IMG/VR virus record: IMGVR_UViG_3300043446_003193
Coordinates: 124,001 to 188,000 of that record
Reading direction: 5' to 3' (one strand)
DNA: 64,000 nt
The number at the start of each line of letters is the position of its first letter. Within the stretch, counting starts at the first letter, position 1. Of this stretch, positions 28,490 through 55,787 are shown one piece after another. The position numbers were made by a program, and so were the translations under genes. The notes below the pieces were generated by a model. The model was not told the origin of the DNA and made no database searches. It saw only the letters and a program-made list of their open reading frames with translations.

Positions 28490-28510
28490 TAGAAAACTAA
28501 AGAAAATTAG
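28490..28510 (+). repeat. AGAAAACTAA-AGAAAATTAG tandem (candidate operator)
   Basis: TAGAAAACTAAAGAAAA (17 nt) is identical to 55574-55590. Confidence 0.7.
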
Positions 28511-28686
28511 TGATTATACTTATTTTTTCTTATAGTTTCTTCTTTTTGTAACCTTTTTTTAATAGAAGGTTTAGTAAAGTTCTTTCTTTCTCTAAGTTCT
28601 TCTATTTGTTTTATGGACTGAACTTTCTTTTTATATTCCTTTAATGCCCACTCTATGTTTCCGTTTTTCACGTTAACTATTAACAT
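28507..28686 (-). CDS. rpsU: 30S ribosomal protein bS21 (phage-encoded; 59 aa, absent from ORF track)
   Basis: My translation: MLIVNVKNGNIEWALKEYKKKVQSIKQIEELRERKNFTKPSIKKRLQKEETIRKNKYNH*. It has the S21 pattern V...NIE.ALK..K.K......ELR.R..F.KPS..R, with an MLI(I/V) start as in Bacteroidota S21. Confidence 0.9.
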   Translation of the reverse strand: MLIVNVKNGNIEWALKEYKKKVQSIKQIEELRERKNFTKPSIKKRLQKEETIRKNKYNH

Positions 28687-28692
28687 AACTAA

Positions 28693-28992
28693 TTAATATG
28701 GTGTTTGATATTCCAATTGTTTTTTTAATTCTCTTTCGTATTCCTTTTCAATTTTATCTAAATCATCTTTAGCAGATTTAATATCTTCTTGATGTTTTTT
28801 TAATTGATAAAGATATTGGTTTTTTCTATCTTCGTTTTGTTCATCAAAATATGCTTTACTCATCATTTTTTGACGAGTTGTTAATCCTTCATATTTTCTT
28901 ATAGCATCAATGTATGCAGATGATGCTTTTCTAAAACCGGCTCTTATTTTAACTGCTTCTTCTTTTAAAGGAATTAGATTTATTAGTTTCAT
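28693..28992 (-). CDS. Putative internal head protein
   Basis: Coiled-coil 99 aa beginning MKLINLIPLKEE. Confidence 0.5.
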   Translation of the reverse strand: MKLINLIPLKEEAVKIRAGFRKASSAYIDAIRKYEGLTTRQKMMSKAYFDEQNEDRKNQYLYQLKKHQEDIKSAKDDLDKIEKEYERELKKQLEYQTPY

Positions 28993-29363
28993 TATTGTAA
29001 ATTAACTAATTTATATTTTGTAGAATATAATAAAGTTACAATCGTATCAATATCGTTTTGTAACCAACTCATTTGTAACTTTTCATCTTTTCTTAATTTC
29101 TCAACTGCTTTACAAAGTTTTTCAAAATAAGAAATTATATTTTTGATATCATTGTTAGTATCAATACCACTTACTGGTTGAACTTTGATTAATCCGTACT
29201 GTCCTTGATATGCTTCCACTAATCCATCTACTAATCCACCAATTGAATCGTAATATGTACCTAAAGCCAAATGAGCAGATAATGCACCAACACCTTTAAC
29301 TCCCCAATGGAAAGCATGTGCTTGTGTTCTACTGTGTAATAATAATGATGCTAATTGTTCCAT
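28992..29363 (-). CDS. Ferritin/Dps-like four-helix protein (DUF5856-like)
   Basis: QAH.FHW...HLALG.YYD.I..LVD.LVE.YQG.YG...LQN.ID.I..L...T.YKL pattern. Confidence 0.75.
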   Translation of the reverse strand: MEQLASLLLHSRTQAHAFHWGVKGVGALSAHLALGTYYDSIGGLVDGLVEAYQGQYGLIKVQPVSGIDTNNDIKNIISYFEKLCKAVEKLRKDEKLQMSWLQNDIDTIVTLLYSTKYKLVNLQ

Positions 29364-29792
29364 TTATTTACAAGTTTTACATTCGTTAATTCCCAGTCTT
29401 TGTTTCATCACATCTTCAGAAATATCTGCTATTTCAAAATATCTTCCTAATACATGTCCCATATCTTCATAAAGAGCCTCTAATCTTTGTTGTTGTGCTC
29501 TAGCTTCTACTGCTTCCTTTTCAAATGAAGTTTGTAACTTTTTAAGTTCATTCATATTTCTCTTAATAGTTACTCTATCAAACCAATCTCCACCTTCTCT
29601 TAAAGTATATTCTTGTGCTGCATCTGCAATACCACCCAATGTTTCTGCAATTTGCATAATATCAGATTTTCTACTCATACCTTCTCTATGTTGGTTATAT
29701 GTAGAAATTATTTCTAAGAAGTGTTTTTTTAATTCAGAAGGCAATTGTTCTAATTGTTCTTCTTCTTTCAATAAATCTTTTAACTTTATCAT
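29364..29792 (-). CDS. Putative internal head protein
   Basis: 142 aa helical, begins MIKLKDLLKEEE. Confidence 0.5.
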   Translation of the reverse strand: MIKLKDLLKEEEQLEQLPSELKKHFLEIISTYNQHREGMSRKSDIMQIAETLGGIADAAQEYTLREGGDWFDRVTIKRNMNELKKLQTSFEKEAVEARAQQQRLEALYEDMGHVLGRYFEIADISEDVMKQRLGINECKTCK

Positions 29793-30067
29793 CTATGTAC
29801 GATTTTATACTTTTTTAATCTTTGTACTGCCTGAGATAAGTCCTGTGGAGTCATATCTAATGCGTCTACTAATTTAGCAATAACTAATTGTTCTTTTTTT
29901 CTTGGTAAGTTATATGATTTAATAACTTGCAATGCTCTATCTAAAAATCTTTCTACTTTAGAAGGTAGATTAACATCCATATCTTCCAAATCTTCATTCA
30001 TTTCTTCTTTTGAAAGAACTACTGCAGTTGTATAATTAGCCGGTATTAAGTTTATTAACTTTGCCAT
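29789..30067 (-). CDS. Putative internal head protein
   Basis: 92 aa, begins MAKLINLIP; ATGA overlap with the next gene. Confidence 0.5.
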   Translation of the reverse strand: MAKLINLIPANYTTAVVLSKEEMNEDLEDMDVNLPSKVERFLDRALQVIKSYNLPRKKEQLVIAKLVDALDMTPQDLSQAVQRLKKYKIVHR

Positions 30068-30068
30068 A

Positions 30069-30659
30069 TTAGTTTAATTCAATTATGATTTCTCTCATTA
30101 AATCCTGTGATTTACACCACTTACCACATTCTTCTGCCATCTGTTTCCATTGTTTAGATTCGTTCATTGGTGCCATAAATGCTCCATGTGTAGATGGATT
30201 AGAAACAAAATCCCAACCTACTAATTCAAAATCTTCTTGAACCATTACAGTTCCATCTCTTAATTCTTTAACAGACCCTAAACCTCTTGATGAAATACCT
30301 AAACGAATATTATTCTTTAATAATTCTTTTAATATGTTACCAGATGGAGTTGAAAGTATTTCTACTACACCACATACATCATCACCTTCCCAAAAAATTT
30401 CTCTAATATTGTGAGATACATTTTTTAAGTTAATTACTGGAGAATCCGGATGGTCTAATTCACCCAACGCTCTTCTTTCTTTAATGAGTTGTTCGTATTT
30501 TTTACACTCTCTTTCCAATATTTCACGTGGATATCTTCTACCATTTTGGTTTGCAGCCCCAGCTCTTTGAAGAATGCCCTTAACTAAATAAGTACCATTT
30601 TCTTCTTGTTGAAGTTTTGCTTCAAATAAGTGTGTTTCTATTAATAGTCCTTTGTTCAT
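30069..30659 (-). CDS. Prohead core protease (T4 gp21 family)
   Basis: NQNGRRYP, ALGELDHP, INL.NVSH, TPSGNI, LGISSRGLGS, DFVSNPST..AF signatures. Confidence 0.95.
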   Translation of the reverse strand: MNKGLLIETHLFEAKLQQEENGTYLVKGILQRAGAANQNGRRYPREILERECKKYEQLIKERRALGELDHPDSPVINLKNVSHNIREIFWEGDDVCGVVEILSTPSGNILKELLKNNIRLGISSRGLGSVKELRDGTVMVQEDFELVGWDFVSNPSTHGAFMAPMNESKQWKQMAEECGKWCKSQDLMREIIIELN

Positions 30660-30952
30660 TAGTCTTTTTTTCTTAATGCTGCTAAATCAGAACCTTCAAT
30701 TTCTCCGTCTTTATCAACATCAATTTGTTTTTGCTTATCAGTCAATTCTGCTTCATTATATCCTCTTAATCTACCTTCTGATTTTGCTTTATAAGCAGTA
30801 TCAACCGCATTAAAGAATTTTTTCTTATCATCATCACTCATAGAGCTGATATCTTTGCCACTCTTATCTAACATATGTTTAAACAATTGCTGATAATCGT
30901 TTTCTTCTTTAACTACCTGACGGATAAGTTCTTTTAATTGTGATGTTTTCAT
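30659..30952 (-). CDS. Putative internal head protein with EF-hand-like loop
   Basis: MKTSQLKELIRQVVKEE start; C-terminal DVDKDGEIEGSD. Confidence 0.55.
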   Translation of the reverse strand: MKTSQLKELIRQVVKEENDYQQLFKHMLDKSGKDISSMSDDDKKKFFNAVDTAYKAKSEGRLRGYNEAELTDKQKQIDVDKDGEIEGSDLAALRKKD

Positions 30953-31549: not shown

Positions 31550-31565
31550 TTTTAATAAATTTAAA

Positions 31566-31802
31566 TTATTGTAATACTATAACCGAACCGGTTAAATTAA
31601 TTAATGCTGCAGGATAACAAGGAAATATCTGATGGTTATCTATTGAAGCCAAACTTATACTACCACCACCCTCTAATGCTATACTTCCACTAGGATTTCC
31701 TTCCCCTCTCATTATACCCCAAACATTTGGATAGTTTGTACCTGGACCTAATGCAACTGAAGAAGATACTATTGTTACTTTGTATGCTCTATAATTTGTC
31801 AT
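31566..31802 (-). CDS. Small hypothetical (likely exterior head) protein
   Basis: 78 aa beta-rich, contains SSS, SGS and TGS. Confidence 0.5.
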   Translation of the reverse strand: MTNYRAYKVTIVSSSVALGPGTNYPNVWGIMRGEGNPSGSIALEGGGSISLASIDNHQIFPCYPAALINLTGSVIVLQ

Positions 31803-31805
31803 TTT

Positions 31806-32681: not shown

Positions 32682-32699
32682 TTGATATAGTTAATCAGA

Positions 32700-32708
32700 T
32701 ATAAATAT
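32700..32708 (-). promoter_or_regulatory. Putative late promoter motif ATATTTATA
   Basis: Intergenic, upstream of 32681. Confidence 0.65.
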
Positions 32709-32725
32709 ATTTTTCTATTAGTTTA

Positions 32726-35603: not shown

Positions 35604-35612
35604 TATAAATAT
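35604..35612 (-). promoter_or_regulatory. Putative late promoter motif ATATTTATA
   Basis: Intergenic, upstream of 35586. Confidence 0.65.
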
Positions 35613-38581: not shown

Positions 38582-41500
38582 TTATTCATAAAAAATACCA
38601 AGTATCTGATTTAATGGTGCGAATGTACCTGTAAGTTTATATGTTTTTCCATTATAAAAGAATACCAGTCCTTCATTTGCCACTATTCTTTCAATTCCAC
38701 CCAATCTATTCAATCTACTCAATTCTTGTTTTAATTTTTGAATTTGTGCAGGATTGCCAGAAGTTTTAACTTGATCGGCAACTGTTTTTAATCGTGATTT
38801 CATTGAACGAATTGCCTTATCAGGATGAACCGTCAATACACTACCAACAAATTCTAAAACATCTGCACCTACTCCTAAAAATATTTCTTCAAATGGTTTG
38901 ATATTATCTTTTTGTTGTTTTGCAACATTTACTTTATCATTATTCATTGCCCAGTCTTGTAACTTAGGATTTGATATTGTATTTAATCTAAAAGATTTAT
39001 CACCAAATGCCCATCTTCTAATTAAAGCTTCTTTTGTAAGTTTATCAACTTTAACAGGTGCGTTTGATGTAATCCACCAATCCCACCAACTTTGATGATA
39101 ATCTGCTACATTATCTGAATCTTTTAATCCAAATTCGGATTGTAATTTTGAAATCTTAGAAAGATATTTTGATTGTTTAGAACTTAAATCTTCTGATTTT
39201 GGAATTTCAGTTATTGGTGGTCCTTGAATTGTGTATTTAGATTGAACATCTGCATTTACTTGCTTAATCATACCTGCTAATACACTCTCTGCTCCATCCA
39301 CCTTACCAACAGCGTTTCCTTTTTCATCATATTCTATACAATTGTGAAATACTAAAAGTGCTTGTCCGTAAGGAATAACATTTACCGAAGTTGGCCAAAT
39401 TACTTCAATATTCATAAATTTGGTTCCTTCACCAAATACTTTTTCTCTTTGTTTTTGAGATAATGCAGATACTGCTGCTGAAAGGTCTTTCATTGCGTAA
39501 TTATATGCATCTGTTAAACCACCTCTTCCGCCAAATTTTGATGCAACATCTTCAATGCCCATTGCACTTGCTCCACCATTTGATAAATGTCCTTTATTTC
39601 TAGCTGCAATTAATCTACCATTTTTCCAGCTGATTGCTAACGCCTGTCCATCGGTTTTTTCTCTTACTACACCTAAATCCCCATTAAGTGCTTTTGTAAC
39701 GATATCTTTAAGGTGTCCAAATGTCAAATCCATATCATCAAATGGATGACTCATATGACCATATGCCCCACCTTCCATTAATAGACCTTCTTTTAAAAAT
39801 TCAGTTGGTTTTTCATCAAATCTAGGTAGGTTTCTTGCAGAATATTTTACAGTATATTGGGTTTCATCTTCATCACCCCATATTGCATCTGCTATTGGAA
39901 AATCCATCTGCGTATATCCACCACTATAATACCAATCATCTCCTTTATTTACACCATCGTCTGCGTCTAATTTTCTAGTATGTCCTTTTGGTAAATAAGC
40001 ACCATCGGCTTGAGAATCTGCATCAGCTAATCCACTTATTTCATTTATATACATTTCAATATCTTCGTATAATTTTGAAATTTGTTCGTCAAAGTTAGGT
40101 TTGATGTTTAATTCTTTTTCCATTTTAGTTATCTCATCATATCCCATATTTCTCAATGATCTTGCAACATCATTTGCTTTATATCCGTTTGGATTTCCGA
40201 ATAAGTATGCATTTATTCTTTTTCTGAATGTTGAATTTTTATATGCATCAATTAAATTTTTAAAATGAACATCATTGGAACCCATTTCATCTATTTTACG
40301 AAATGTAGTTGCCTGTCTTCCATTTATTGTTGGCATTCCATGATCATCCTTTCCAATATCTTTAACTTGTACCTTTTTATTTTTAAACTTACCCATTAAA
40401 ATAGTATCACCCGTATCAACATCTACATTAACATCTTCTTTGTTAATTTCAATTGCTGCCAGTTGCTTTTTAGCAGATGCTAACGAATCATGAGTTCCTA
40501 ATCTATCTCCACCATTTTTTGGATATACAACATATTTGTCACCAACTTTTTTTATGGTTTCGTTTACATTTTCATTGTAGATTTGTTTGTTGATTCTACC
40601 ATATTCTCTCATTAGAATTCCTGCAACTGCATGTGCTTGGTTTTCTATTGGAGAACCATCTGCACCATCTTTTTCTAAATTTCTAACTAACCCCAATTCA
40701 TCTTGCTTTCTATGAACCATTTCATGTGCAAGAGTTCTTAGGATATCTGCTGTTAATCTACCTTCGGTTGCAACATATATGGATTTATCTTCAGGATTAT
40801 ATCCACCTAAACTTGTTTTTACTTCTGCGAATTCTCTTCCACCAACTAATGTAACATTTGGTGTTTCTTTTAATTTTAATCTTTTAGTTGCAAATTCTAC
40901 AAAATGTTGAATAGATTGTTGTTTTGTTTCTGATAAATTTTCATTTAAAGAAAACTTACTAATCATTTTTTTATTATTCCAACTATCTGCTATTTTTTCC
41001 GCAATTTCAGGAGTAATATCCATATTTTCTATTCTTTCTGCAATTGCGGCTGCAAATATATTTAGTGCACTTGCTTCATCAATATCTTCGGCAAAAATAG
41101 CAGCTTTTCCTACACCAGTTGCAACTACTTCTGTTACAGCATGTGGTATCAATTCCATAGCCGTATGTTTTACCAACCCAGCAGCACCATGTGCCAATCC
41201 GCCACCAACTGCTGCAAATAATGCTGTTGTAGCTATTTTAATACCAACGGATTTTAAAGCTTTTTTCTGCTTATCATCTAATTTACCACCAGCCATTAAA
41301 GTTTTTACACTACTACCAGCTGTTTTAAATGTATCATATTCATGCTTCAAACCATGCATAATTGCATGTCCAGCACCTTTTGCTTTGTCCATTATAGCCT
41401 GACCCCAACTTCTTCTCTCATCGTGTCCTTCTTTTTTATTTAATAACTTAGAAAAAGTTTGTTTTTCTTCTTTACTCCAATTTTTTACTTTTTCTTGTAT

Positions 41501-42667
41501 TCTTTTTACTTGACCTTCTTTTGTATTTCCTGATTTTTCTTTTTGTGCATTTTTTTCAGCATCAGATTTTAATTCTACACCAGATAATTTTTGTTCTGGA
41601 GGCGGACCTTGTTGGGTATCAGAATCGGTTCCTATTGGAGAAGTTTTTTCTTTATCTATTTTTCCTTGAGTGGTTTGTCCTTGTTTTGTTGGTTGTCCAG
41701 GCTCAGATGGTTTAGCTGCTTGAGTTGCTGCTTTTCCAGGTTCTTCTTTTTTCTTTGGTTGATTAGCAGGAGCATCGGCTGGCCCAGCTATTTTAGCAGC
41801 TTGAATATGTGCAGGATGCTCTTTAGGTAATCGTAATGCATCTCTTGCTTTAATTTTCTTTTGTTGTCCTTTTGAATTTGTATATGTTATATCAACGTCT
41901 AATGCAGGATTTTCAGCTTCTCCAAAATATTGATTTGTAAATTCTTCAAACATTTCATTGGTAATGTAGTTTTGAATTATTTCAGAAATAGGATCATATA
42001 CATAATCATCGTCTGTTGTAGCTACTGCTCTAATTTCTTTATTCTTTTTTTCAATAGCCTCTACATCTTCTTTTGAAGGGTATCCTCTATATAATTCTTC
42101 GTTAAGTTTGGTTGTTATCATTTTGAATATTTCTCTATCAAATTTTGGATATGCTTTTAAGAAAAACTTTTTAGCTTTTTCTTTATCATTACTTCCCAAT
42201 CCTTTTCTAACTTGAGTTCCACTAATTGGATTTGGTTCTGGAGGGATAGGATATGTATAACCAATTTCATCATAACCATATCCAGATTTTCCGTTATATG
42301 GTTTGAAATATTTACCTTGTAACCTTGTTGCATCTTTTTCACCAACTGCTGCAATATAAGCAGTAGTTTTTCCATCAAACTTTCCAAGTATTTCTACCGG
42401 TCTATATGGGTTAGAAACTTTAACAAATTTTGAAGCAGGAACTCCAAACATTGTAGTTGCTATTTCTTTTTTTTCTTTAAAAGTAAATGGTGATTTATCT
42501 GAAGATGTATCATTAGAACTTGCTATATAGACATTTGCTTCTCCAAACTGAGAAACTAATCTTTGATACGCATCATAATGTCCTCTGTGAAATGGTTGAA
42601 AACGACCACCGTATATTACGATAGTTTTTTTAACCTCTGGTTTATTCACTTCTTTTATTAAATTCAT
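38582..42667 (-). CDS. Multidomain protein: HxGH nucleotidyltransferase + HExxH metallopeptidase-like + RNA-ligase-like (DUF6267-like) domain
   Basis: YGGRFQPFHRGH at the N-terminus; LRTLAHEMVH mid-protein; C-terminal GHMSHPFD...EKTDG...EGLVF...YKLTG. Confidence 0.75.
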   Translation of the reverse strand: MNLIKEVNKPEVKKTIVIYGGRFQPFHRGHYDAYQRLVSQFGEANVYIASSNDTSSDKSPFTFKEKKEIATTMFGVPASKFVKVSNPYRPVEILGKFDGKTTAYIAAVGEKDATRLQGKYFKPYNGKSGYGYDEIGYTYPIPPEPNPISGTQVRKGLGSNDKEKAKKFFLKAYPKFDREIFKMITTKLNEELYRGYPSKEDVEAIEKKNKEIRAVATTDDDYVYDPISEIIQNYITNEMFEEFTNQYFGEAENPALDVDITYTNSKGQQKKIKARDALRLPKEHPAHIQAAKIAGPADAPANQPKKKEEPGKAATQAAKPSEPGQPTKQGQTTQGKIDKEKTSPIGTDSDTQQGPPPEQKLSGVELKSDAEKNAQKEKSGNTKEGQVKRIQEKVKNWSKEEKQTFSKLLNKKEGHDERRSWGQAIMDKAKGAGHAIMHGLKHEYDTFKTAGSSVKTLMAGGKLDDKQKKALKSVGIKIATTALFAAVGGGLAHGAAGLVKHTAMELIPHAVTEVVATGVGKAAIFAEDIDEASALNIFAAAIAERIENMDITPEIAEKIADSWNNKKMISKFSLNENLSETKQQSIQHFVEFATKRLKLKETPNVTLVGGREFAEVKTSLGGYNPEDKSIYVATEGRLTADILRTLAHEMVHRKQDELGLVRNLEKDGADGSPIENQAHAVAGILMREYGRINKQIYNENVNETIKKVGDKYVVYPKNGGDRLGTHDSLASAKKQLAAIEINKEDVNVDVDTGDTILMGKFKNKKVQVKDIGKDDHGMPTINGRQATTFRKIDEMGSNDVHFKNLIDAYKNSTFRKRINAYLFGNPNGYKANDVARSLRNMGYDEITKMEKELNIKPNFDEQISKLYEDIEMYINEISGLADADSQADGAYLPKGHTRKLDADDGVNKGDDWYYSGGYTQMDFPIADAIWGDEDETQYTVKYSARNLPRFDEKPTEFLKEGLLMEGGAYGHMSHPFDDMDLTFGHLKDIVTKALNGDLGVVREKTDGQALAISWKNGRLIAARNKGHLSNGGASAMGIEDVASKFGGRGGLTDAYNYAMKDLSAAVSALSQKQREKVFGEGTKFMNIEVIWPTSVNVIPYGQALLVFHNCIEYDEKGNAVGKVDGAESVLAGMIKQVNADVQSKYTIQGPPITEIPKSEDLSSKQSKYLSKISKLQSEFGLKDSDNVADYHQSWWDWWITSNAPVKVDKLTKEALIRRWAFGDKSFRLNTISNPKLQDWAMNNDKVNVAKQQKDNIKPFEEIFLGVGADVLEFVGSVLTVHPDKAIRSMKSRLKTVADQVKTSGNPAQIQKLKQELSRLNRLGGIERIVANEGLVFFYNGKTYKLTGTFAPLNQILGIFYE

Positions 42668-47600: not shown

Positions 47601-49406
47601 ATCATAAGTAAATGCAGTTGCTAATGATTTTGTTATACTAATAGAACCATTTGAATATTCTCTTCCAGTTACCCAACTTGCACCCAATCCAATTTGACTT
47701 TGATTTATTTTAAAACGAACACTAAAATTATCAGTTAATACAAATCCATTTCCATCTGTAATTGTGGCCGTATGTGTTGATGTTCCATCATTTGCAGATG
47801 TCGCAGGATTATTAACAGTTATAGTAATTACTCCAGATGCCGTTTTTGCTCCTGATGCGGAAACCGTGCTATCGGTTGACGTAGCAGAAACACTTGTAAC
47901 AGAAAATCCATTATCATTTGAACCATTAATAGTAACCGTTCCTGTAAAAGTTCTATTAGCTCCTGTTAAAACATAATCTTGATCATCAATTGTTAAAACT
48001 CCCTTTTGTGGTATTAATATATCTCCGGTTTCTGTATATCCGGATACAAATGTAGAATTGCCATCGCTTCTTCTTGCTCTTACTCTTGCTTTTGCATATT
48101 GTGCAGTTGTAGTTTTACCTGCAATAGTTACCGAAGGTGTTACATTTGTACCGGCTGCAACCAAAGAAGTCCATGCTCCATAAGAACCACCACTATCTTT
48201 AACAGCATAATCTATATCATAATTTAAAGTAGTTCCACTTACAGCTGCAGTCAAAGCAGTGACCGTTACACCAAATGATTGTCCAAAAGCAGAATATGCT
48301 GCACTAATAGATGGTGAAACCATAGCAACAGTTACATTCGTAGTTGTATGATTTCTAACACTACTATTACTACTATTTGTAATATTTACTCTAAGAGATT
48401 GACTACCTAAAGTATTATAATAAATTGATAAATTTTGAGAAGTTGATGTAGAAATACTTGCTCCTGTTAATACCCAATTATAAGATATTGCAATAGAATC
48501 GGGATTATATAAAACTGTTGAAGTAACAGAATATGCAACAAAAGGTTCTACACTCGTAGAAGCACCAATTGATACCGCCATTGGTCTTCTAAATGTAGTT
48601 GCCGTAGTACTTGCCGTATCAAATGGGTTTGCCGAATCTTTGACCACAATAGTATAATCATCATCGGCCGTATTACTTGAATTATTAAAAGTTGCAGTAT
48701 TTACATCTGCAGAACCATAACCTGCTCCATTAAAATTATAATAATACGGAGAAACACCACCTGCAACATTCACAGTAAAATCTACGGAACCGGTAGTATA
48801 ATTATACGTTCCTGCGCCAGTAAATGATGGAGAAGTTGTAACTGATGTAATTGTTAAATCAACTGCATTTACAAAAACTGTTTTAGAATCATTTGCTTGT
48901 TTATTTGAAGAGTTTATTCTAAGTTCTAATCGTAATGTGTTTGTAGAATTTGGTACAATATATGTATTACTATTATCAACATAAAAGTCAGAAGCATTAG
49001 TTACATTTCCGGTAAGAGTTGCAGGAAATACATTTGTTCCAGTATATACACCATTTACCCAGATTTTAATATATGCCGTTTCTCCGGACTGCATACCCGT
49101 CACAGTATATGTAAAATCTAATCTTTTACCTGATTGAGCATTTGTATTAGCAGGACTAGTTAAAGTATTTATTGTAATTGCAGGAACTTTACCTTCAAAT
49201 TCTACAAACTCATATTGACTTCCAGTAGGCCTTGCTCCAGTACTTGGGTTTAATACTCCGACAGTATTTGGTAAATCTCTGACAGTATTTGGGTCAACTG
49301 TACCGGTCAAAAATTGATTTGCAACATATGAACCACTTACTGTCGTAGTTGCAGTGTTAAGACCGGCAGAAGAACCTAAATCTCCAATTCGTATATTACT
49401 TGCCAT
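44610..49406 (-). CDS. Large Ig/FN3-like repeat tail protein with C-terminal Hint domain
   Basis: S/T-rich beta-sandwich repeats; GGT|CLAKGTKILMWDG...T.EHP...TYFANNILVHN. Confidence 0.8.
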   Translation of the reverse strand: MASNIRIGDLGSSAGLNTATTTVSGSYVANQFLTGTVDPNTVRDLPNTVGVLNPSTGARPTGSQYEFVEFEGKVPAITINTLTSPANTNAQSGKRLDFTYTVTGMQSGETAYIKIWVNGVYTGTNVFPATLTGNVTNASDFYVDNSNTYIVPNSTNTLRLELRINSSNKQANDSKTVFVNAVDLTITSVTTSPSFTGAGTYNYTTGSVDFTVNVAGGVSPYYYNFNGAGYGSADVNTATFNNSSNTADDDYTIVVKDSANPFDTASTTATTFRRPMAVSIGASTSVEPFVAYSVTSTVLYNPDSIAISYNWVLTGASISTSTSQNLSIYYNTLGSQSLRVNITNSSNSSVRNHTTTNVTVAMVSPSISAAYSAFGQSFGVTVTALTAAVSGTTLNYDIDYAVKDSGGSYGAWTSLVAAGTNVTPSVTIAGKTTTAQYAKARVRARRSDGNSTFVSGYTETGDILIPQKGVLTIDDQDYVLTGANRTFTGTVTINGSNDNGFSVTSVSATSTDSTVSASGAKTASGVITITVNNPATSANDGTSTHTATITDGNGFVLTDNFSVRFKINQSQIGLGASWVTGREYSNGSISITKSLATAFTYDNFQYKVGSGGTYADLNSGTYTTAHNGWTAPSADQTWYYHVKASGGTYRQSDFNETSVTVYGYPNQGYGYSLTSNINSGTLSQVQSVVFSVTRSSGNFTKISARLDAYYPNGGSAGGQSLTDAQIDPDSVASFSFSALSLYDAICNSSTIGDGYGSVYLTYTISSGLYYYHTLTNKTVTVTREPGTIDVVKGGSGFVDGYAIRGVNFTLDASYTTNGPTETNSQGGYWYVWLDNNRMQASPLSFNGANPYNGTYLIRTNTSTTFCRKLATTSKTTLSSSSRGTVTYTWWGNLYTYSGTTNAWTLYINAGSERSKDISITVKGKRLASITGTPSVAFTKGYTEMSIYAGLLTYDSNDGTIDLTADNITVEYQIADTNGTVLTTQSGITFTGLSFGSTYKMRVKATDDWGTIKYSSWTANQLVEDLDYTFTLNTPATLYGIYAYQGPTYTPTRIINLDTWSGRTGGTFSTNSSVITFDNLEPNTKALASIHTVLSMDNKYTWSNFPGAYTTMTVSVDSGNAPGTGAYGMFRMFQNTYNGLWETADNTSPQQGEGALNIKTFQLYNTGDTSGNSLPYTNGNYYLAARVVSSATLGVTTTYRIHGQKSSTDTSQGTDYYIVLRNRGVVNTLSFVSKSVVCGGVTATYSVGQIDTATKLVIEKSTDNSTWTAAETFTSITANTNYAAFISLTSGTTMYFRAKIYNSSDTLLSTTATNSAISYNAVAASGNITAPTVSLDTPTCGTLTYAFSRTGTANAQNAATYYVVWYKCTFDYGPEGSILNQGSRSFGTSYAFSISSIACDNPIYYEIYAVSESGCSGTANSSCLIYKYTGAGCDCTGGGTCLAKGTKILMWDGSEKNVEDLIEGDLLKNISIDGFSEEEDAWKTFSTNTFDYVDSMSAVKSVTSGVWHYHYVINDKLKITFEHPIFIKRDNEYKFLRAEDVIVGDMMYNLDGNWEMIEEKIRVDELDEFISLDVETNDTYFANNILVHNVLGPGGKITP

Positions 49407-52400
49407 TAGATAAAACCTGTTTTAAAGTATTTACTTCTTTTTTTAAATTTTGTATTTGTTTAACCATAATTGGAATTAGTTCATTATATTTTATGGTTAA
49501 ATACTCTCCCATTATTCTTCCATCTGTTAAATTTGGATATATTTTTTCAACATCTTGTGCAATAAATCCATAATGTTTTTTATTTTCACTATCAGAATTC
49601 CAACTATATGCAACCGGATGTAATCTATCCATATCTTCAATTTCAGTTTCATCTATATCAACTATATTTTTTTTCAATCTTATATCAGAACTAAGTGATG
49701 TTGAAAAACCGGCAATATCACCTTTTACATGCAATTCTCCATAGTGAGCAAAATATCCTGCAGATTTTATATTTGCATTAGCAGCTGTTGGTGTAGCAAT
49801 ATCTTCAACTTTAAGAAAATTACCAGTACTATCCTGTGAACTATTAAATAATGCCTGTAATCCTCTTTCTGAAATTTCTACTTGTTTTGTTAATGAAGTA
49901 GCTGTTAAAGATAATCCTTTTGCATAATAATTTGTTGAAGATGGTGAATATGAATCTACTCCAATACTTTCTGCCCAAATTGCATATCCAGCTGGTATAG
50001 TACCAAATCCAAATAAAGTAAATGAATCATAATAATCAATATGCCATCTTGTTTTTCTATAATTCGCAACCAAACCATTTGATTTTGTAGTGGATATTTG
50101 TAATGGGTTTGTTGTTTTACCAAGAGTTATAAATTGAAAAGAAGTATCTGCAAATTCTTCTTGAGTACTTGTAGTAGATGGAGAAACTGTTCTAGAAATT
50201 GAACCAATTGATGTTCCACCATAAGATAATGTACTTGTTACAGTTGCAGTACCAGTAACCGAATCAAAAGAAGTATAAAAATCAATATATTGTCCATCCA
50301 TTTGTGAAAGAGTAGTATATGATGTTCCTTTTTTAGTATTAAAATATGATATAAAAGCAGTAACAGCTGCTTCAGCACTACCACCTATCCATCCTCTAGT
50401 GATAGAAGAATAATAATTTAAATTCGTTGGGTCTTGACTTAAATTATATTTTATATGATATGCAATATTTAGAGCTGCTTGATCAACAGTTGAAAAAGTA
50501 CCAGTAGAAGCTACATATGTATACTCCATTGTTGGAGCATTGTTCCATTCTAAATCAATTCTATATTTAACCGATGCGTTAATTGAATATGTTGATGTAG
50601 CAGATAAACTGGTATACATATTAGTACTTGTTGCCGACAAAGTAGCTACCGTAGAACCATTAACATTATACAAATACAAATTTTGTGGTGTTGAAGTTCC
50701 TATACTAAAATAAGTTTGAGCGGTAGTTGCCGTTATTGCACTACCTGCTCCTGGAACTGTTGTTAACAATTCACCTGGATGAATAAGTACACGGTTTCCT
50801 GCATAGGTACTTTCCCCTGTAATTTGAATATAATTATCAGCCCCAGTTCCTCCAGCATTTAAAGTAATTTTATCTTTAGAAATGCTATTTTGACCAATAA
50901 CCCACCCACCAATAGTACCATCAGTAGCAGTTATTTTTCCAGATATGTTCGCGTTGGAAGCTACTAAAGCACCTGCAGTATCTACTCTAAATGGAGCAGA
51001 GTTAAATGCCGTATTACCCGCATGAAATCCTGCAATTGACATTACCGCTTGTGAATTACCGGATGAATTACCTGCTATTACTCTTGATTGACCACCATCT
51101 AATATCACACCATTTGTTGCAGTACCACCAATTAATTTTCCTGCTTGAATTTCAAATCCACCAATTGATCCAGTTTGAGCAGTTAATGTTGTTGCAGATA
51201 TTGCACCACCAATATCAACTATATTTGTTGCAGATGCATCGTATTTAAAATAATTACTACCACTAACAAAACTTACTTTTGGTACAAATGAACTTCCACT
51301 AATTCCTAACCAAATACCATTAGTACCATATGATTGAACTCCTTGACCTATTGAAACAAATGGTTTGGTAGTTCCACCTGCTAATGTTATATTTGCAGCA
51401 GAACCAGATGCATTAGTACCAATATTTAAAGTATTTTTAACATACGATTCATCAAATATTGCAATCTTAGCTGCAACAAAGAAATCTTGTGTTCCCAAAT
51501 ATTCCCAATAAGAATTGCTTGCTCCATCGGTAGGTGCATTTCCAGTTGTTTGCTGTAATGTTGCGTAATATTTTGTAACACCTCCTGAACTTTGATAAAC
51601 GGCATCTCTTCTTGAAGAACCCGCAACAGTTGTGTAATAATAAGTTGTGCCTGCTGCATATTCTCCTCTTAACACAATACCAGGACCCGTCGCTCCGGTA
51701 TTTCCATCAGTACCATCCGATGAAACATTTACATTATGTGTTTTATAAAAAGTTGTAGAAGTTCCTTCCGAATCTACATATGATCCGGTAATGCTTACAA
51801 TTAATCCACTTGTAGAAGATGGTGTAGAAGGTGTTATTGTTGTATATCCATCACCATCTACACCGGCATTTGTACCATTTGTTACAGAAGATATTCTAAA
51901 TGAAGGTATAACATATGGAGAAGTGGCATCATACGCATATGCACTACCACCTTCATTTACATATAATTTAAATGAAGAAGGAGTACCATATGAACCTGCT
52001 GTACTTTTTGTAATAGTTTGTCCATCTTTTTCAATTGATACAACTACCGCCGGTGGTGCCGCTAATGCTTTAGAAACGGTAGCTACAACATTTTTAGTAC
52101 CAGATGTACCTTCACTATCGGTATAGTTTACAGGTATTGTTACTTGAGCAGTTGAACCAGTTATTGAAGATGCCGTTGATGTTATTGTTATAACATTTGA
52201 CGAAACTGTTCCTGCCAATCCATTTGTATATGTTGGTGTACCTATTGAAGTAAATCTACTTGTACCAGATTCCAAAGCAGTTATCGTTAATGCGGTTGGA
52301 GTAGCAGAACCACTTGTTTTTGAATTTGCATTTATTGATTGTGCAGATGGAGATACTGCTACTAATACATTTGGTGTACCTGCTTTAGCTTTTGAATATG

Positions 52401-55400
52401 TTACTAATTTTACAAATGTACTATCACTTCCTCTACCATCTCTGTAAGTTACTTTTAAATTTATACTACCACTATCAGCGGATAACGCGGTTATAGAATA
52501 GTTGTTATTTGTAAGTACTGCTGTTACATTTGAAGATGATGAAATACTTGCACTAAATTTATTGTTTCCAATTGTAGATGCGTATGAAATATCTTCACTT
52601 CCAACTTTTACTGATATAGAACCACTACTTGCTAAAAACCCACCAAAAACAGTTCCACCAGAATATGCAGGAAATGTTGTATTTTCGTTTGATACTGTCA
52701 CTGCAATTTGTGATTCAGCTATTACCGGAGTAATTGTAATTGTATCACTATAAACTGCATTATTTAAATCATAAGCAGTAAATGTATATGTTGTTGCGCC
52801 AGATGAATATGAATAATCACTACCATTTATACTATATGATTGTACACCGGTGGTATTATTGTTAGAACCAACGGTCAAAGCTGGTTTACTACTACCACTA
52901 GTTACAGTAATTTCATTTGTAGTACTTCCTAAATTATTTCTTTTTACATCAATTGTTATAGTTTGTCCAGATGGTGATAAACTCAAATCGGTCATTTTAT
53001 AAAAAAACTGATTAGCGTTAGAAACTGCATTTAAGTTTTTACTCTTATCACCTTTTAATACACCTTCCAATTGTACCGAAGATGAATATCCTCCTTTATT
53101 AAAATAATAAGTTCCTTTATGTGTAAGTTGGGTAGGAGTAGCATATGACCAAGATGCTACATTTGTACCTAGCATTGCAACATCGTGTTGATCATCTCCA
53201 CTAAAAACACGATAAACAGACTCGGTAGATTTTCCTATATATTCGGTAGATATTAAAGCTAATTTTGGTAAATAAGAACCAGAAGTTATGTAAATACTAC
53301 CAGAAACAATGTTATTTGTTAGCTTTATATCAATAAAATCATTAAGTTGTGCAGGAACATTATTATCGTCTGGATCATACACAAATTGATTTTTATTAGC
53401 AATTGCAATGAAATTTTGACCATCAATACCATCTGCACCAACAGCTCCTTGATCAACTCTATAAATGTTTACCAAATCTCTTACATCTTCGCAAGATGCC
53501 GTATATTGAACTCTACTAATTTTTGATGAAGATATTGATCCAGTAAAATTAGAAACCAAAAGAGTTGCGGATGTTTCCGTTACATTTGTTAATAAACCAG
53601 GATAAAAAGGTTCAGATGCATAAACCGATGGATTAATGTAATCACCATTTGCATCAAATGCTGAAGAGTAGAATGTTACAGAACCGGTTAATCCTATTTT
53701 TGAAATATCAAAATTTATTGAAGATACTCCAATTGTTTCTCCTGAGCCAGAAAAACTAAATAGTGTATTATCTGGAGTTACTGTTAATGATTTTTGAACA
53801 ATTGTATCTGTTCCACCAGTAAATGTAATTTCTTTTTCTAAAGTAACAGGTACATAATTGTTATTAATATCGTAAAATTCAAAACGAAAATCGTAAGTAT
53901 CATTATTTACTTTAGTCGGAACATTTACATTTAGAGTAACTTCATTAGGAGAAAAGTTTGTTTCTTGAGAAGCTCGTAAACTTATGTTTGATAAATACCA
54001 TTCTCCTTGATGAATATTAAAAAATATTTGTCCCTGCCCATCAGTATCTGGTTTAAAATTTATTTGTTGTTTATCAAATCTTCTAAAAGATTCACTAACA
54101 TTAAATTCACCTAAAAGTTTTCCATATCCAAGATCAGAGTCCTCAACTACGAATGCCGGTCCAACACCAAACACATTTAATTTTCCATAACCAAAAGAAG
54201 ATGATTGCAATAAAAGACTGAAATCTAATTGATATTCAGTATTACTTAGAAAATCAATATCATTGTGATTATAAAAAACTCTCTGTGGATGTTGTGTTGT
54301 ATTTAAAGTATTATCGTCTTGTAGTTTTACTGAAGATGCTAATACTGAATCATTTTGTGTAGCAGTATAATATGTATTTTCTTCATGTTTTTTATATTTC
54401 CAAAAATCATCTATTATTTTTTGAGATGAAAATTGTCCTATTCTAACATTTACACTTCCACTATATGCATCAGTTTGAAATAGTTCATTTGATTCTAACT
54501 GAATATCTTCTAATAAACTATAATTTCCAATATCTGATTTTCTTTTACCAAATATTTTCAAACGATTTACATCACCACTAAATGTTTCCAAATTAGCTAT
54601 TTTTATTTTAGCATAAGAAGAACTAATTGCAGAGTTTGTTAAAGTTACACTTTCGTTATATGGTAATGTAAATGATGCGGAAGAAAAATCAGTTACATAT
54701 TGTACGGCGTTTGTGGCATTTGAAGATGTTTCATAATAAGGAATTGTTGCTAATGCTTTTTTAGAATTAACAACATCTTTTATAATTGTAGAATATGATT
54801 GATTTAATCCAGTTATCGTAATTGTTTCACCTTCCATAGATGATGAAAAATTACTTCCACTAATTTTTAATTCATAAATTGTATCACCTTTGAAAGTTCT
54901 AAAATTTGAACCAGATGTAGGTTGTACCGAAACACCATCAACACTTCCACTAATAGTTACTCTATTTACAGTTCTATTGTATATTGGTAAAATTGTTTCA
55001 GTTATATCTACCGTCGGTCTACGATAGAAACGAATCTTTGTTGTATTTGCAATAATAGGATTTACATTCACTACTTTTTGCCATCTAACATTATATTGAT
55101 TTTCCCAGTTTGAAGGGATTGGTGTTAGTAATCCATTAGCATCTTCATATTCACTTAATTCTCCTAATATAGTAATTGTACATGGACCAAATGCAGTATC
55201 TGGATAAACATATACTGCCACTACTTTTGAAGTTCCTTCATAATATTCAGGAATACCTTCTCCTGGTTCGTGATAAATTACATTTCCTAATGCATCTTTA
55301 ATTTCTATCTTTATAAGAGTATCGGCAACTAATTCAGGAGAACCCTGAATTAAAAAAGAGTTTTTACCACCAGAAAAAGTTCCAGGTAGTTCGGTGATTC

Positions 55401-55491
55401 TAAAGTATCTACTATTTGGATCAGTATCTTCTAAAAATATATTATATCTCTCTAAATTTTCTGGAAATAGAGTCTTTTTAAGAATGGCCAT
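49396..55491 (-). CDS. Giant tail/central fibre protein with C-terminal peptidase S74 chaperone
   Basis: 2031 aa; G.IGG(F/W).I repeats; ends SSDIRLKKNI...PVAYSWN...GFIAQDV...YNELIPIMV. Confidence 0.8.
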   Translation of the reverse strand: MAILKKTLFPENLERYNIFLEDTDPNSRYFRITELPGTFSGGKNSFLIQGSPELVADTLIKIEIKDALGNVIYHEPGEGIPEYYEGTSKVVAVYVYPDTAFGPCTITILGELSEYEDANGLLTPIPSNWENQYNVRWQKVVNVNPIIANTTKIRFYRRPTVDITETILPIYNRTVNRVTISGSVDGVSVQPTSGSNFRTFKGDTIYELKISGSNFSSSMEGETITITGLNQSYSTIIKDVVNSKKALATIPYYETSSNATNAVQYVTDFSSASFTLPYNESVTLTNSAISSSYAKIKIANLETFSGDVNRLKIFGKRKSDIGNYSLLEDIQLESNELFQTDAYSGSVNVRIGQFSSQKIIDDFWKYKKHEENTYYTATQNDSVLASSVKLQDDNTLNTTQHPQRVFYNHNDIDFLSNTEYQLDFSLLLQSSSFGYGKLNVFGVGPAFVVEDSDLGYGKLLGEFNVSESFRRFDKQQINFKPDTDGQGQIFFNIHQGEWYLSNISLRASQETNFSPNEVTLNVNVPTKVNNDTYDFRFEFYDINNNYVPVTLEKEITFTGGTDTIVQKSLTVTPDNTLFSFSGSGETIGVSSINFDISKIGLTGSVTFYSSAFDANGDYINPSVYASEPFYPGLLTNVTETSATLLVSNFTGSISSSKISRVQYTASCEDVRDLVNIYRVDQGAVGADGIDGQNFIAIANKNQFVYDPDDNNVPAQLNDFIDIKLTNNIVSGSIYITSGSYLPKLALISTEYIGKSTESVYRVFSGDDQHDVAMLGTNVASWSYATPTQLTHKGTYYFNKGGYSSSVQLEGVLKGDKSKNLNAVSNANQFFYKMTDLSLSPSGQTITIDVKRNNLGSTTNEITVTSGSSKPALTVGSNNNTTGVQSYSINGSDYSYSSGATTYTFTAYDLNNAVYSDTITITPVIAESQIAVTVSNENTTFPAYSGGTVFGGFLASSGSISVKVGSEDISYASTIGNNKFSASISSSSNVTAVLTNNNYSITALSADSGSINLKVTYRDGRGSDSTFVKLVTYSKAKAGTPNVLVAVSPSAQSINANSKTSGSATPTALTITALESGTSRFTSIGTPTYTNGLAGTVSSNVITITSTASSITGSTAQVTIPVNYTDSEGTSGTKNVVATVSKALAAPPAVVVSIEKDGQTITKSTAGSYGTPSSFKLYVNEGGSAYAYDATSPYVIPSFRISSVTNGTNAGVDGDGYTTITPSTPSSTSGLIVSITGSYVDSEGTSTTFYKTHNVNVSSDGTDGNTGATGPGIVLRGEYAAGTTYYYTTVAGSSRRDAVYQSSGGVTKYYATLQQTTGNAPTDGASNSYWEYLGTQDFFVAAKIAIFDESYVKNTLNIGTNASGSAANITLAGGTTKPFVSIGQGVQSYGTNGIWLGISGSSFVPKVSFVSGSNYFKYDASATNIVDIGGAISATTLTAQTGSIGGFEIQAGKLIGGTATNGVILDGGQSRVIAGNSSGNSQAVMSIAGFHAGNTAFNSAPFRVDTAGALVASNANISGKITATDGTIGGWVIGQNSISKDKITLNAGGTGADNYIQITGESTYAGNRVLIHPGELLTTVPGAGSAITATTAQTYFSIGTSTPQNLYLYNVNGSTVATLSATSTNMYTSLSATSTYSINASVKYRIDLEWNNAPTMEYTYVASTGTFSTVDQAALNIAYHIKYNLSQDPTNLNYYSSITRGWIGGSAEAAVTAFISYFNTKKGTSYTTLSQMDGQYIDFYTSFDSVTGTATVTSTLSYGGTSIGSISRTVSPSTTSTQEEFADTSFQFITLGKTTNPLQISTTKSNGLVANYRKTRWHIDYYDSFTLFGFGTIPAGYAIWAESIGVDSYSPSSTNYYAKGLSLTATSLTKQVEISERGLQALFNSSQDSTGNFLKVEDIATPTAANANIKSAGYFAHYGELHVKGDIAGFSTSLSSDIRLKKNIVDIDETEIEDMDRLHPVAYSWNSDSENKKHYGFIAQDVEKIYPNLTDGRIMGEYLTIKYNELIPIMVKQIQNLKKEVNTLKQVLSNGK

Positions 55492-55502
55492 TAATCTTTT
55501 TA

Positions 55503-55511
55503 CATAAATAT
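55503..55511 (-). promoter_or_regulatory. Putative late promoter motif variant ATATTTATG
   Basis: Upstream of 55491. Confidence 0.55.
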
Positions 55512-55532
55512 TCTCAAAAAAATAATCTTCAC

Positions 55533-55541
55533 ATATTTATA
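55533..55541 (+). promoter_or_regulatory. Putative late promoter motif ATATTTATA (plus strand)
   Basis: Upstream of the only plus-strand gene, 55602. Confidence 0.6.
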
Positions 55542-55544
55542 TAA

Positions 55545-55594
55545 AGAAAACTAATAAATACTATATTGTATTATAGAAAACTAAAGAAAACTAA
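55545..55594 (+). repeat. Three AGAAAACTAA direct repeats (candidate operator)
   Basis: Copies start at 55545, 55575 and 55585. Confidence 0.8.
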
Positions 55595-55601
55595 ATAAGT
55601 T

Positions 55602-55787
55602 ATGAAATACGCAATGTTGCAAATTAAAAAAGAAACCCATGAACTTCTCAAATCATATTGTGAAGAACACGGGTTTAAAATGGGTAGTTTAGTTGAAAAT
55701 CTAATCAAAAAACACGTTGGTGTTTCAAAACCTCAATCAGGTGTGTTGAAGGCTGATAAAGTTACTGTTAGAAATCAATCTTACTAA
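55602..55787 (+). CDS. Small DNA-binding regulator, ribbon-helix-helix-like
   Basis: Only credible plus-strand gene. A short beta strand (YAMLQI) precedes two helices (ETHELLKSYCEEHG.KM..LVE.LI); it has its own upstream ATATTTATA motif. Confidence 0.7.
   Translation: MKYAMLQIKKETHELLKSYCEEHGFKMGSLVENLIKKHVGVSKPQSGVLKADKVTVRNQSY

What the first reader, a model, noticed from the sequence alone, without database searches (positions are those of the whole stretch)
28490..55787. Shared phased operator links a small divergent regulator to the capsid operon
Seen: AGAAAACTAA occurs three times at 10-bp-multiple spacing (55545, 55575, 55585) between the promoter motif and start of the 61-aa plus-strand gene. 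The 17-mer TAGAAAACTAAAGAAAA recurs at 28490, about 10 nt upstream of the scaffold-capsid promoter motif. Established: ribbon-helix-helix proteins bind phased direct repeats and often autoregulate. Inference: the protein represses itself (sites downstream of its promoter) and modulates head-gene transcription (site upstream).
Basis: partly seen in the sequence, partly recalled or inferred. Interest (0 to 1): 0.65.

Follow-up and report, generated by a model that had tools for sequence, protein, structure and literature searches.

The report
Phage RHH regulator with shared operator
A tiny DNA-binding protein of an uncultured freshwater phage carries a phased 10-bp repeat in its own promoter region, and the same repeat sits, strongly conserved in over a hundred relatives, just upstream of the promoter of the head scaffold and capsid genes, so it most likely controls both itself and head-protein production.

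Summary
The 10-mer AGAAAACTAA occurs five times in the 209-kb phage genome, all inside this window.

In relatives from IMG/VR the architecture is kept:
- The late promoter core is followed after 3 nt by unit 1.
- The spacing from unit 1 to the last unit is exactly 20, 30 or 40 bp in 60 of 60 distinct sequences, while neighbouring spacers drift by single bases.
- The scaffold-side copy is at least 90% conserved per column in 50 distinct relatives whose scaffold proteins are only 59-89% identical.

The 61-aa protein is a real gene under purifying selection. It has a ribbon-helix-helix fold and is predicted to form the antiparallel-strand dimer typical of that fold.

Best reading: an Arc-like regulator, made from a late-class promoter, that represses itself and acts on the scaffold-capsid promoter, and possibly on the divergent tail-fibre promoter. 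Binding, and the direction of the effect on head genes, are inferred and not shown. This is a new member of a known kind of regulator. The closest functional analogue is SvtR of archaeal virus SIRV1.

The parts
55602..55787 (+). 61-aa ribbon-helix-helix (Arc-like) protein gene. It is one of only about 14 called ORFs on the plus strand of the 209-kb genome.
   Evidence: PHROG Arc-like repressor, E=4.8e-6. AF2 model with helices 10-23 and 27-38. The top Foldseek hits are nearly all RHH proteins, though weak. Homodimer score 0.39 against a best control of 0.00, with antiparallel pairing of residues 4-8. Variable sites by codon position are 7/3/28.
55533..55541 (+). Late-class promoter core ATATTTATA for the RHH gene.
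   Evidence: The motif has 40 genome copies, 38 on the gene strand and 30 within 80 nt of a start. Positions 1-8 of the core are 96-100% conserved and the last position 86% in 58 distinct relatives.
55545..55554 (+). Operator unit 1. It starts 3 nt after the promoter core and probably overlaps the transcription start.
   Evidence: The distance from promoter start to unit 1 is 12 nt in 60/60 distinct sequences. Per-position conservation is 93-100%.
55555..55574 (+). 20-bp spacer, possibly two decayed units. In relatives its length is 0, 10 or 20 bp beyond the penultimate unit.
   Evidence: The spacing from unit 1 to the last unit is 20 (17 sequences), 30 (30) or 40 (13) bp and never anything else.
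55575..55594 (+). Operator units 2 and 3, in tandem, ending 7 nt before the ATG.
   Evidence: Exact copies. Most positions of the block are 96-100% conserved (range 82-100%).
55503..55511 (-). Late-promoter-like core (ATATTTATG) of the divergent 2031-aa tail-fibre gene (49396-55491). The operator array lies upstream of it.
   Evidence: Sequence. ATAAATAT on the plus strand is kept in relatives. The fibre identity rests on Peptidase_S74 and phrog_1980.
28490..28510 (+). Capsid-side operator: one exact unit plus an 8/10 unit, with 17 bases identical to 55574-55590. On the transcribed (minus) strand it lies about -25 to -45 from the inferred start.
   Evidence: It is at least 90% conserved per column in 50 distinct relatives and exact in 60 of 72 further loci. 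It is present in four complete relatives.
28471..28479 (-). Late-promoter-like core (ATATTTATT) of the scaffold-MCP operon.
28325..28470 (-). Conserved structured 5' leader of the scaffold mRNA. It places the transcription start downstream of the operator.
   Evidence: 28 predicted pairs, 12 with compensatory changes. No Rfam match.
27107..28324 (-). 405-aa, very acidic, scaffold-like protein gene. The gp23-like major capsid gene follows at 25458-27083.
   Evidence: Translation. MCP matches Pfam Gp23 at E=1e-77.
58956..58975 (-). Possible third site, inside the last codons of the primase gene and 46 nt before the SbcCD start.
   Evidence: A 17-mer is shared with 55579. The rare codons CTA (7% usage) and AAG (18% usage) are kept in 41/55 and 45/55 distinct relatives, and lost in the rest.

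Best explanation
The 61-aa gene encodes a dimeric ribbon-helix-helix DNA-binding protein, transcribed from a late-class promoter. Its operator is the 10-bp unit AGAAAACTAA, whose outer bases form a pseudo-dyad (TTAG, four bases, CTAA). Dimers would bind successive units on one face of the helix.

At its own gene, unit 1 abuts the promoter core and covers the likely start site, and two tandem units fill the leader. Occupancy would therefore block initiation or early elongation, giving negative autoregulation.

A two-unit copy sits immediately upstream of the scaffold-MCP late promoter. The same protein would therefore tune head-protein transcription. I rate repression or damping as slightly more likely than activation, because all characterised single-domain phage and plasmid RHH regulators repress. 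The array also lies upstream of the divergent tail-fibre promoter and may affect it.

Shown here: the motif, its phasing, its conservation, the fold, and the predicted dimer. Inferred: that this protein binds the motif, and the sign of each effect.
For: - The motif is rare and specific: 5 copies in 209 kb, against 0.46 expected per window. Intergenic 17-mer sharing is far above chance.
- The promoter-to-unit-1 distance is fixed at 12 nt. The spacing from unit 1 to the last unit is quantised at 20/30/40 bp in 60/60 distinct relatives, while adjacent spacers vary by single bases (14-17, 27-30, 16-27).
- Operator bases are mostly 93-100% conserved, while synonymous sites of the adjacent gene vary.
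- The scaffold-side copy is conserved in 50 distinct relatives with 59-89% scaffold identity, while its upstream flank is not. It is exact in 60/72 further loci.
- In seven long genomes (G000-G006) the RHH gene and the scaffold-side site co-occur.
- Where a 198-aa gene is inserted (L052), the array stays with the promoter at the head of the operon.
- The DNA-reading strand residues M5-K10 are invariant, as is the operator core.
- SvtR of SIRV1 is a precedent: an RHH that represses its own promoter and binds a tail-fibre gene promoter (PMC5569661).
Against:
- No covariation test was possible, because both the strand residues and the operator are invariant. The two lineages with a diverged scaffold-side motif exist only on contigs of 20 kb or less, without the RHH locus.
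- The Pfam match is below its cut-off (18.7 against 21 bits), and the Foldseek E-values are above 0.4.
- A regulator made from a late promoter cannot prevent premature head-gene expression, so the biological logic of repression is unclear.
- The scaffold promoter core is non-consensus, which would fit activation instead.
- In several relatives the T-rich strand of the scaffold-side motif also serves as the U-tract of an upstream terminator.
Confidence: 0.6

Rival explanations
1. The repeat is a real regulatory site, but another phage or host factor binds it (for example a late-transcription accessory protein). The RHH gene is merely one of its targets.
For: Conservation and phasing show a constrained site, not who binds it. 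All three loci lie in late or replication-to-late transition regions.
Against: RHH proteins characteristically bind repeats in their own promoters (PMC5569661). The array is fixed at the head of the RHH operon even after a gene insertion. No other candidate regulator is adjacent.
Confidence: 0.15
2. The phased A-tracts act as intrinsically curved, UP-like DNA that boosts or shapes promoter activity without a dedicated protein.
For: A4 runs recur every 10 bp, and the 10-bp quantisation would preserve curvature. The lineages with a diverged scaffold-side motif still keep T-runs there.
Against: The non-A positions (G2, C7, T8) are 96-100% conserved in unit 1 and 86-100% in the last unit, and the identical sequence is used at both loci. 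Curvature does not require this. In the RHH gene the array is downstream of the promoter, where an UP-like role makes no sense.
Confidence: 0.1
3. The array acts at RNA level. It could be an A-rich unstructured translation leader for the first gene of the RHH operon. Or the RHH leader could pair with the complementary stretch at the 3' end of the bS21 transcript (17 nt).
For: The array ends 4-7 nt before the first start codon, including in L052. The plus-strand leader and the minus-strand transcript at 28490-28506 would be perfectly complementary.
Against: The scaffold-side copy lies upstream of the inferred transcription start and is kept where the upstream gene is not bS21 and ends in a terminator. 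The distance to the ATG drifts while the distance to the promoter is fixed.
Confidence: 0.05
4. The match is a chance product of A-rich, low-complexity sequence.
For: With one mismatch the 10-mer is at background. The reversed control pattern occurs 3 times in the genome.
Against:: exact tandem copies, intergenic 17-mer sharing about 90-fold over expectation, and deep conservation.
Confidence: 0.01

Closest known systems
[quoted passage not shown]
   Same: A small viral RHH dimer that represses its own promoter and binds, with highest affinity, upstream of a structural (tail-fibre) gene promoter (PMC5569661). The logic of 'self plus a virion gene' is the same as proposed here.
   Different: It is an archaeal virus with a TBP/TFB promoter. 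Its site is an imperfect inverted repeat about 80 nt from the promoter. No sequence similarity was detected. Here the units are 10-bp direct repeats, and the targets are the head scaffold/MCP genes of a bacterial T4-like phage.
Omega / ParB of plasmid pSM19035
   Same: An RHH dimer that binds contiguous short repeats whose number and arrangement differ between sites (PMC9499535). From my own knowledge, it regulates several promoters including its own.
   Different: It uses 7-bp heptads and has plasmid copy-control and partition roles with a ParA partner. No ParA-like neighbour is present here, and the units here are 10 bp.
Arc and Mnt repressors of phage P22 (from my own knowledge)
   Same: Arc is the best PHROG family match, and Arc structures are among the fold hits. 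Two dimers bind adjacent subsites about one helical turn apart and autoregulate.
   Different: P22 is a temperate phage, the immI region controls antirepressor, and the operators are palindromic 21-mers. Here the setting is a late promoter in a large, apparently lytic myovirus-type genome, with direct repeats.
T4 late transcription (TATAAATA promoters with gp55/gp33/gp45; from my own knowledge)
   Same: An AT-rich single-element promoter lies 3-35 nt upstream of structural genes. The capsid is gp23-like, and the gene order portal-protease-scaffold-MCP is shared.
   Different: The core here is ATATTTATA, not TATAAATA. I know of no gene-specific RHH regulator of T4 head promoters. Homologues of gp55/gp33 were not looked for here.

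Membership tests
Ribbon-helix-helix (Arc/MetJ) superfamily | An N-terminal strand followed by two helices, in about 45 residues. | tested here: met
   The AF2 model has residues 1-9 extended and helices 10-23 and 27-38, with pLDDT 74-91 over the first 40 residues. Among the Foldseek hits are VapB, NikR, ParG, Arc, CopG, omega and RelB, all weak (E of 0.4 or more) as expected for so small a domain.
Ribbon-helix-helix (Arc/MetJ) superfamily | An obligate homodimer in which the two N-terminal strands pair antiparallel. | tested here: met
   Homodimer score 0.39, best of 3 controls 0.00. That mark was reached by 21 of 30 solved homodimers and 0 of 23 monomers. The runs agree in at least 95% of contacts, and partner pLDDT is at least 64. 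The closest pairs are 4:8, 5:7, 6:6 and 34:34. This is a model, not a measurement, and it may reflect likeness to solved RHH dimers.
Ribbon-helix-helix (Arc/MetJ) superfamily | A sequence-profile match to a curated RHH family. | tested here: inconclusive
   PHROG phrog_3180, Arc-like repressor, E=4.8e-6. Pfam RepB-RCR_reg scores 18.7 bits, below its 21-bit cut-off. A PDB sequence search gave only chance hits.
Ribbon-helix-helix (Arc/MetJ) superfamily | Sequence-specific binding to repeated operator subsites, usually in the protein's own promoter. | not testable with these tools
   Phased, conserved repeats are present in its own promoter region. Binding needs EMSA or footprinting.
RHH antitoxin of a type II toxin-antitoxin pair | Co-transcribed adjacent toxin gene. 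| tested here: not met
   The gene stands alone on the plus strand between a tail-fibre gene and SbcCD. The only co-transcribed partner seen in relatives is a GDSL-like insert.
RHH centromere-binding protein (ParG / omega type) | A neighbouring ParA-type ATPase and a long array of four or more contiguous repeats. | tested here: not met
   No ATPase neighbour. The arrays hold 2-3 good units.
T4-type late promoter | A TATAAATA core recognised by a gp55-like sigma factor. | tested here: not met
   The strand- and position-biased motif here is ATATTTATA. TATAAATA itself shows no upstream bias (6 of 69 copies). The presence of gp55/gp33 homologues was not tested.

The most novel reading that the evidence does not exclude
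In a large clade of uncultured freshwater T4-like phages, probably of Bacteroidota, late transcription is not governed by promoter class alone. A dedicated late-made RHH protein forms a small regulon through one shared operator: its own gene, the divergent tail-fibre gene, the scaffold-MCP operon, and perhaps the primase/SbcCD junction. This regulon would couple head and fibre production. The operator array would evolve by whole helical-turn steps.
Probability: 0.35. Interest if true: 0.55.

Novelty: new member of a known kind. Interest (0 to 1): 0.45.

Why it matters
Gene-specific control of the most highly expressed late genes (scaffold and major capsid protein) is not part of the textbook picture of T4-like phages, where late promoters are thought to be switched on as a class.

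This clade is abundant in lake metagenomes: more than 150 contigs carry the regulator. It offers an unusually clean, testable cis/trans pair: a 61-aa protein, a 10-bp unit, and two or three sites per 200-kb genome.

It also supplies promoter consensus sequences for an uncultured phage group, and a conserved structured leader next to a phage-encoded ribosomal protein bS21. Both are useful for annotation and for building expression tools in Bacteroidota phages.

Tried and rejected
No transcript ends or expression data could therefore be obtained, and read laying was not used.
- GenBank phage collection: no protein match to the regulator and no DNA match to the scaffold leader. The MCP's nearest isolates are only 53-55% identical.
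- PDB sequence search with the family profile: only chance SUMO-like hits.
- Rfam on the scaffold leader: nothing.
- Covariation between protein and operator: impossible. Residues 5-10 and the operator core are both invariant.
- Search for long contigs of the two lineages with a diverged scaffold-side motif (L157 and L126/L148 types): only contigs of 20 kb or less were found. Whether their regulator differs is unknown.
- Sigma-70 and terminator scan around the RHH gene: promoter-like hits at or below shuffle level, and no terminator.
- Antitoxin and partition-protein readings: rejected for lack of partner genes.
- Chance: rejected.
- The big representative-protein search was not used. The word search already gave 166 family members, and no claim here rests on absence of relatives.
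Full report
**Setting**

The window is bases 124,001-188,000 of a 209,443-bp IMG/VR virus record rated complete. Of 222 called genes, 208 lie on the minus strand.

The capsid protein is gp23-like (Pfam Gp23, E=1e-77). Its nearest isolates are Flavobacterium phage immuto and Microcystis phage Mel-JY01, at 53-55% identity.

Read along the minus strand, the gene order is:
- primase (59870-58911)
- an SbcD-SbcC fusion (58914-55768)
- the plus-strand 61-aa gene (55602-55787)
- a 2031-aa tail fibre with a Peptidase_S74 end (55491-49396)
- further large proteins
- TerL (37225-35618)
- portal (34474-32726)
- prohead protease (30659-30069)
- ribosomal protein bS21 (28686-28507)
- a 405-aa very acidic, scaffold-like protein (28324-27107)
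- the major capsid protein (27083-25458)

**The observation**

There is a fifth copy on the minus strand at 58960. That makes five copies against 0.46 expected, and none of 100 shuffles reached five. These are the only five copies in the whole genome. With one mismatch allowed the count is at background, so the signal lies in the exact, tandem form.

The 17-mer shared by 28490 and 55574 is real. A second 17-mer links 55579 to 58959 on the other strand.

I called intergenic regions (83 regions, 9.1 kb) and asked how often two of them share an exact 17-mer. The answer was nine pairs, against about 0.1 expected under first- or third-order Markov models.

**The promoter motif**

Reading all intergenic regions on the gene strand shows two classes.
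- One class looks like a Bacteroidota host promoter: TTTGGTA, about 17 bases, then GTATAT. There are 12 copies, one of them in the 431-bp gap (59475-59905) that my script's gene calls left inside the primase ORF listed.
- The other class is ATATTTATA. It has 40 copies, 38 on the gene strand. Thirty lie within 80 nt of a start codon, typically 3-35 nt upstream, mostly before structural genes.

The second motif sits at 55533-55541 on the plus strand, 3 nt before repeat unit 1. Its 60-nt leader is the longest of the class, because the repeats are inserted in it.

On the minus strand, ATATTTATG (55511-55503) precedes the tail-fibre gene by 11 nt. The two late-type promoters therefore stand back to back.

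Before the scaffold gene the core is ATATTTATT (28479-28471), exactly 10 nt from the 17-mer, followed by a 146-nt leader.

**Relatives: the regulator side**

A peptide-pattern scan of IMG/VR found 151 contigs encoding the protein at 85-97% identity in the 80 kept. The word search found 166 cluster representatives; the 120 listed are all at least 75% identical, and the sources that name them call nearly all 'hypothetical protein'.

In 60 distinct upstream sequences:
- The promoter-to-unit-1 distance is always 12.
- The distance from unit 1 to the last unit is 20 (17 cases), 30 (30 cases) or 40 bp (13 cases), and never anything else.
- Control spacers in the same sequences drift by single bases: last unit to ATG 14-17, fibre core to RHH core 27-30, fibre start to fibre core 16-27.

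Within a length class the spacer sequence itself is poorly conserved. Length, not sequence, is what is kept. This fits proteins bound on one face of the helix. It also fits gain and loss of whole units, and the two explanations are not exclusive.

Operator positions are 93-100% conserved in unit 1 and 82-100% in the last unit. Meanwhile the adjacent coding region shows 28 variable third positions against 7 first and 3 second positions. That pattern also shows the ORF is a real gene under purifying selection.

In two contigs (L052, L024) a 198-aa GDSL-like gene has been inserted between the array and the regulator gene. The promoter and array stay at the head of the operon.

**Relatives: the capsid side**

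Scaffold homologues (59-89% identical) were fetched with their upstream DNA.

In 50 distinct sequences the block TTTCTTTAGTTTTCTAAAAA, the operator read on the gene strand, is at least 90% conserved per column. That is as well conserved as the promoter core and the leader. The sequence further upstream is not conserved.

A second set, fetched with a divergent scaffold as query, has the exact 16-mer in 60 of 72 loci and one mismatch in seven. Only two small lineages have a diverged version, and one contig has a deletion.

In four long relatives (three rated complete by CheckV, one 73%) the 11-mer core is rare (2-6 copies). It always marks both the regulator leader and the scaffold promoter. Two further long contigs that carry the scaffold-side site also carry the regulator.

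In some relatives the upstream gene is not bS21 but ends in a terminator hairpin that abuts the motif. The element therefore belongs to the scaffold promoter, not to bS21.

**The third site**

The copy at 58956-58975 lies in the codons GAA CTA AAG AAA ACT AAA of the primase C-terminus, 46 nt before the SbcCD start.

Among 55 distinct relatives the rare codons CTA (7% of Leu codons) and AAG (18% of Lys codons) are kept in 41 and 45 respectively. Other Leu codons nearby vary freely. Several lineages carry synonymous changes that destroy the motif.

I treat it as a possible, partly conserved site.

**The protein**

- PHROGs places it with Arc-like repressors (E=4.8e-6). Pfam gives only a sub-threshold match.
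- The AF2 model has an extended N-terminus and helices 10-23 and 27-38. A disordered, variable tail runs from residue 43.
- Foldseek hits are individually weak, but VapB, NikR, ParG, Arc, CopG and omega are among them.
- The homodimer test passed: score 0.39, best of three controls 0.00. That mark was reached by 21 of 30 solved homodimers and by 0 of 23 monomers. The runs agree in at least 95% of contacts, and pLDDT is at least 64. The strands pair antiparallel (4:8, 5:7, 6:6), with helix-2 contacts (34:34). This is the canonical architecture. The pass may partly reflect memory of solved RHH dimers.
- Residues 5-10 and most of the two helices are invariant across the family.

**Mechanism**

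Shown: a rare, phased, deeply conserved repeat at two promoters, and an adjacent RHH gene.

Inferred: the protein binds it.

*At its own gene.* Unit 1 begins 3 nt after the promoter core, so it should cover the start site, and two tandem units fill the leader. This geometry points to negative autoregulation.

*At the scaffold promoter.* The two-unit site spans roughly -25 to -45. The structured leader (see below) puts the start downstream of it, so the site acts on DNA, not within that transcript.

*The sign of the effect is open.* Precedent favours repression: Arc, CopG and omega, and SvtR, which represses its own promoter and binds a tail-fibre gene promoter (PMC5569661). The non-consensus core and the upstream position would suit activation. 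The regulator has a late-class promoter, so it cannot be a guard against premature expression. Damping or balancing of head-protein synthesis late in infection is my best guess.

*The tail-fibre promoter.* The array is also upstream of this divergent promoter, in the same orientation relative to transcription as at the scaffold promoter. It may therefore be a third target.

**Rivals**

- Another binding factor cannot be excluded (0.15).
- Pure DNA curvature fits the phasing, but not the strict conservation of G, C and T positions or the downstream location at the RHH gene (0.10).
- RNA-level roles fit the proximity to the start codon, but not the scaffold-side copy (0.05).
- Chance is excluded.

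**Known or new**

Autoregulating RHH proteins on phased repeats are well known. A paper on bS21-encoding lake phages describes a similar structural-gene neighbourhood, but mentions no promoter or regulator. There bS21 is on the opposite strand to the structural genes (PMC9723584).

I found no description of this family or of its operator. I rate it a new member of a known kind. It has one unusual setting: gene-specific control at the scaffold-MCP promoter of a T4-like phage.

**Limits**

- No binding data.
- No natural loss-of-regulator genome was available for comparison.
- Late-sigma homologues were not searched for.

Noticed in passing
window 28325-28470 (-): The 146-nt leader of the scaffold gene is a conserved structured RNA. 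It has a 5' hairpin with CG/UA swaps in 9 of 24 sequences, a nested two-stem element with GC/AU swaps in 10 of 24, and an invariant third hairpin. That is 28 pairs, 12 of them with compensatory changes. There is no Rfam match.
   Followed up: partly
window 28325-28345 (-), just before the scaffold ATG at 28324: An SD-like TAAGGA (AAGGAG in many relatives) is conserved 8-10 nt before the scaffold start. Only 13 of 222 genes in the genome have any SD-like word, which is the background rate. The gene directly follows a phage-encoded ribosomal protein bS21 in this lineage. From my own knowledge, bS21 helps sequester the anti-SD in Bacteroidota ribosomes. A link between phage bS21 and scaffold translation is worth testing.
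   Followed up: partly
window 28507-28686 (-): Phage-encoded ribosomal protein bS21 (Pfam Ribosomal_S21, E=5.5e-13). Here it lies on the same strand as the structural genes. The published bS21 lake phages carry it on the opposite strand (PMC9723584).
   Followed up: partly
whole genome G000; examples in window at 59860 (-), and at 35604, 38565, 32700 (-): There are two promoter classes. One is early, host-like: TTTGGTA, about 17 nt, then GTATAT (12 copies), resembling Bacteroidota -33/-7 promoters. The other is late: ATATTTATA (40 copies, 38 on the gene strand).
   Followed up: partly
window 55768-58914 (-): SbcD (metallophosphoesterase) and SbcC (SMC/AAA_23) are fused in one 1048-aa protein. 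Its 3' end overlaps the convergent regulator gene by 20 nt, so late transcription of the regulator runs antisense into it.
   Followed up: no
L052 2408-3004 (+); also L024: In some relatives a 198-aa GDSL-lipase-like gene is inserted between the operator array and the regulator gene, forming a two-gene operon.
   Followed up: partly
window 1-15562 (-) and genome 97,000-124,000: A series of very large paralogous genes (626+, 1130, 845, 1109 and 1224 aa, and more upstream of the window) share many exact 17- to 40-nt segments. They are probably a family of tail-fibre or receptor-binding proteins shuffling modules.
   Followed up: no
window 38582-42667 (-): A 1361-aa protein with an N-terminal cytidylyltransferase-like domain (phrog_395), set among the structural genes.
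   Followed up: no
window 25359-25457 (-) and 55795-55811 (+): A 17-mer, CTCTTTTTTTATTTCTA, is shared between the terminator-plus-late-promoter region downstream of the capsid gene and the DNA just past the regulator's stop codon. It is probably low-complexity coincidence. No hairpin was found at 55795.
   Followed up: no
genome G000 about 16,400-20,900 (outside the window): The intergenic stretches there look like a tRNA gene cluster, with typical acceptor and T-arm sequences. This was not checked with ARAGORN.
   Followed up: no
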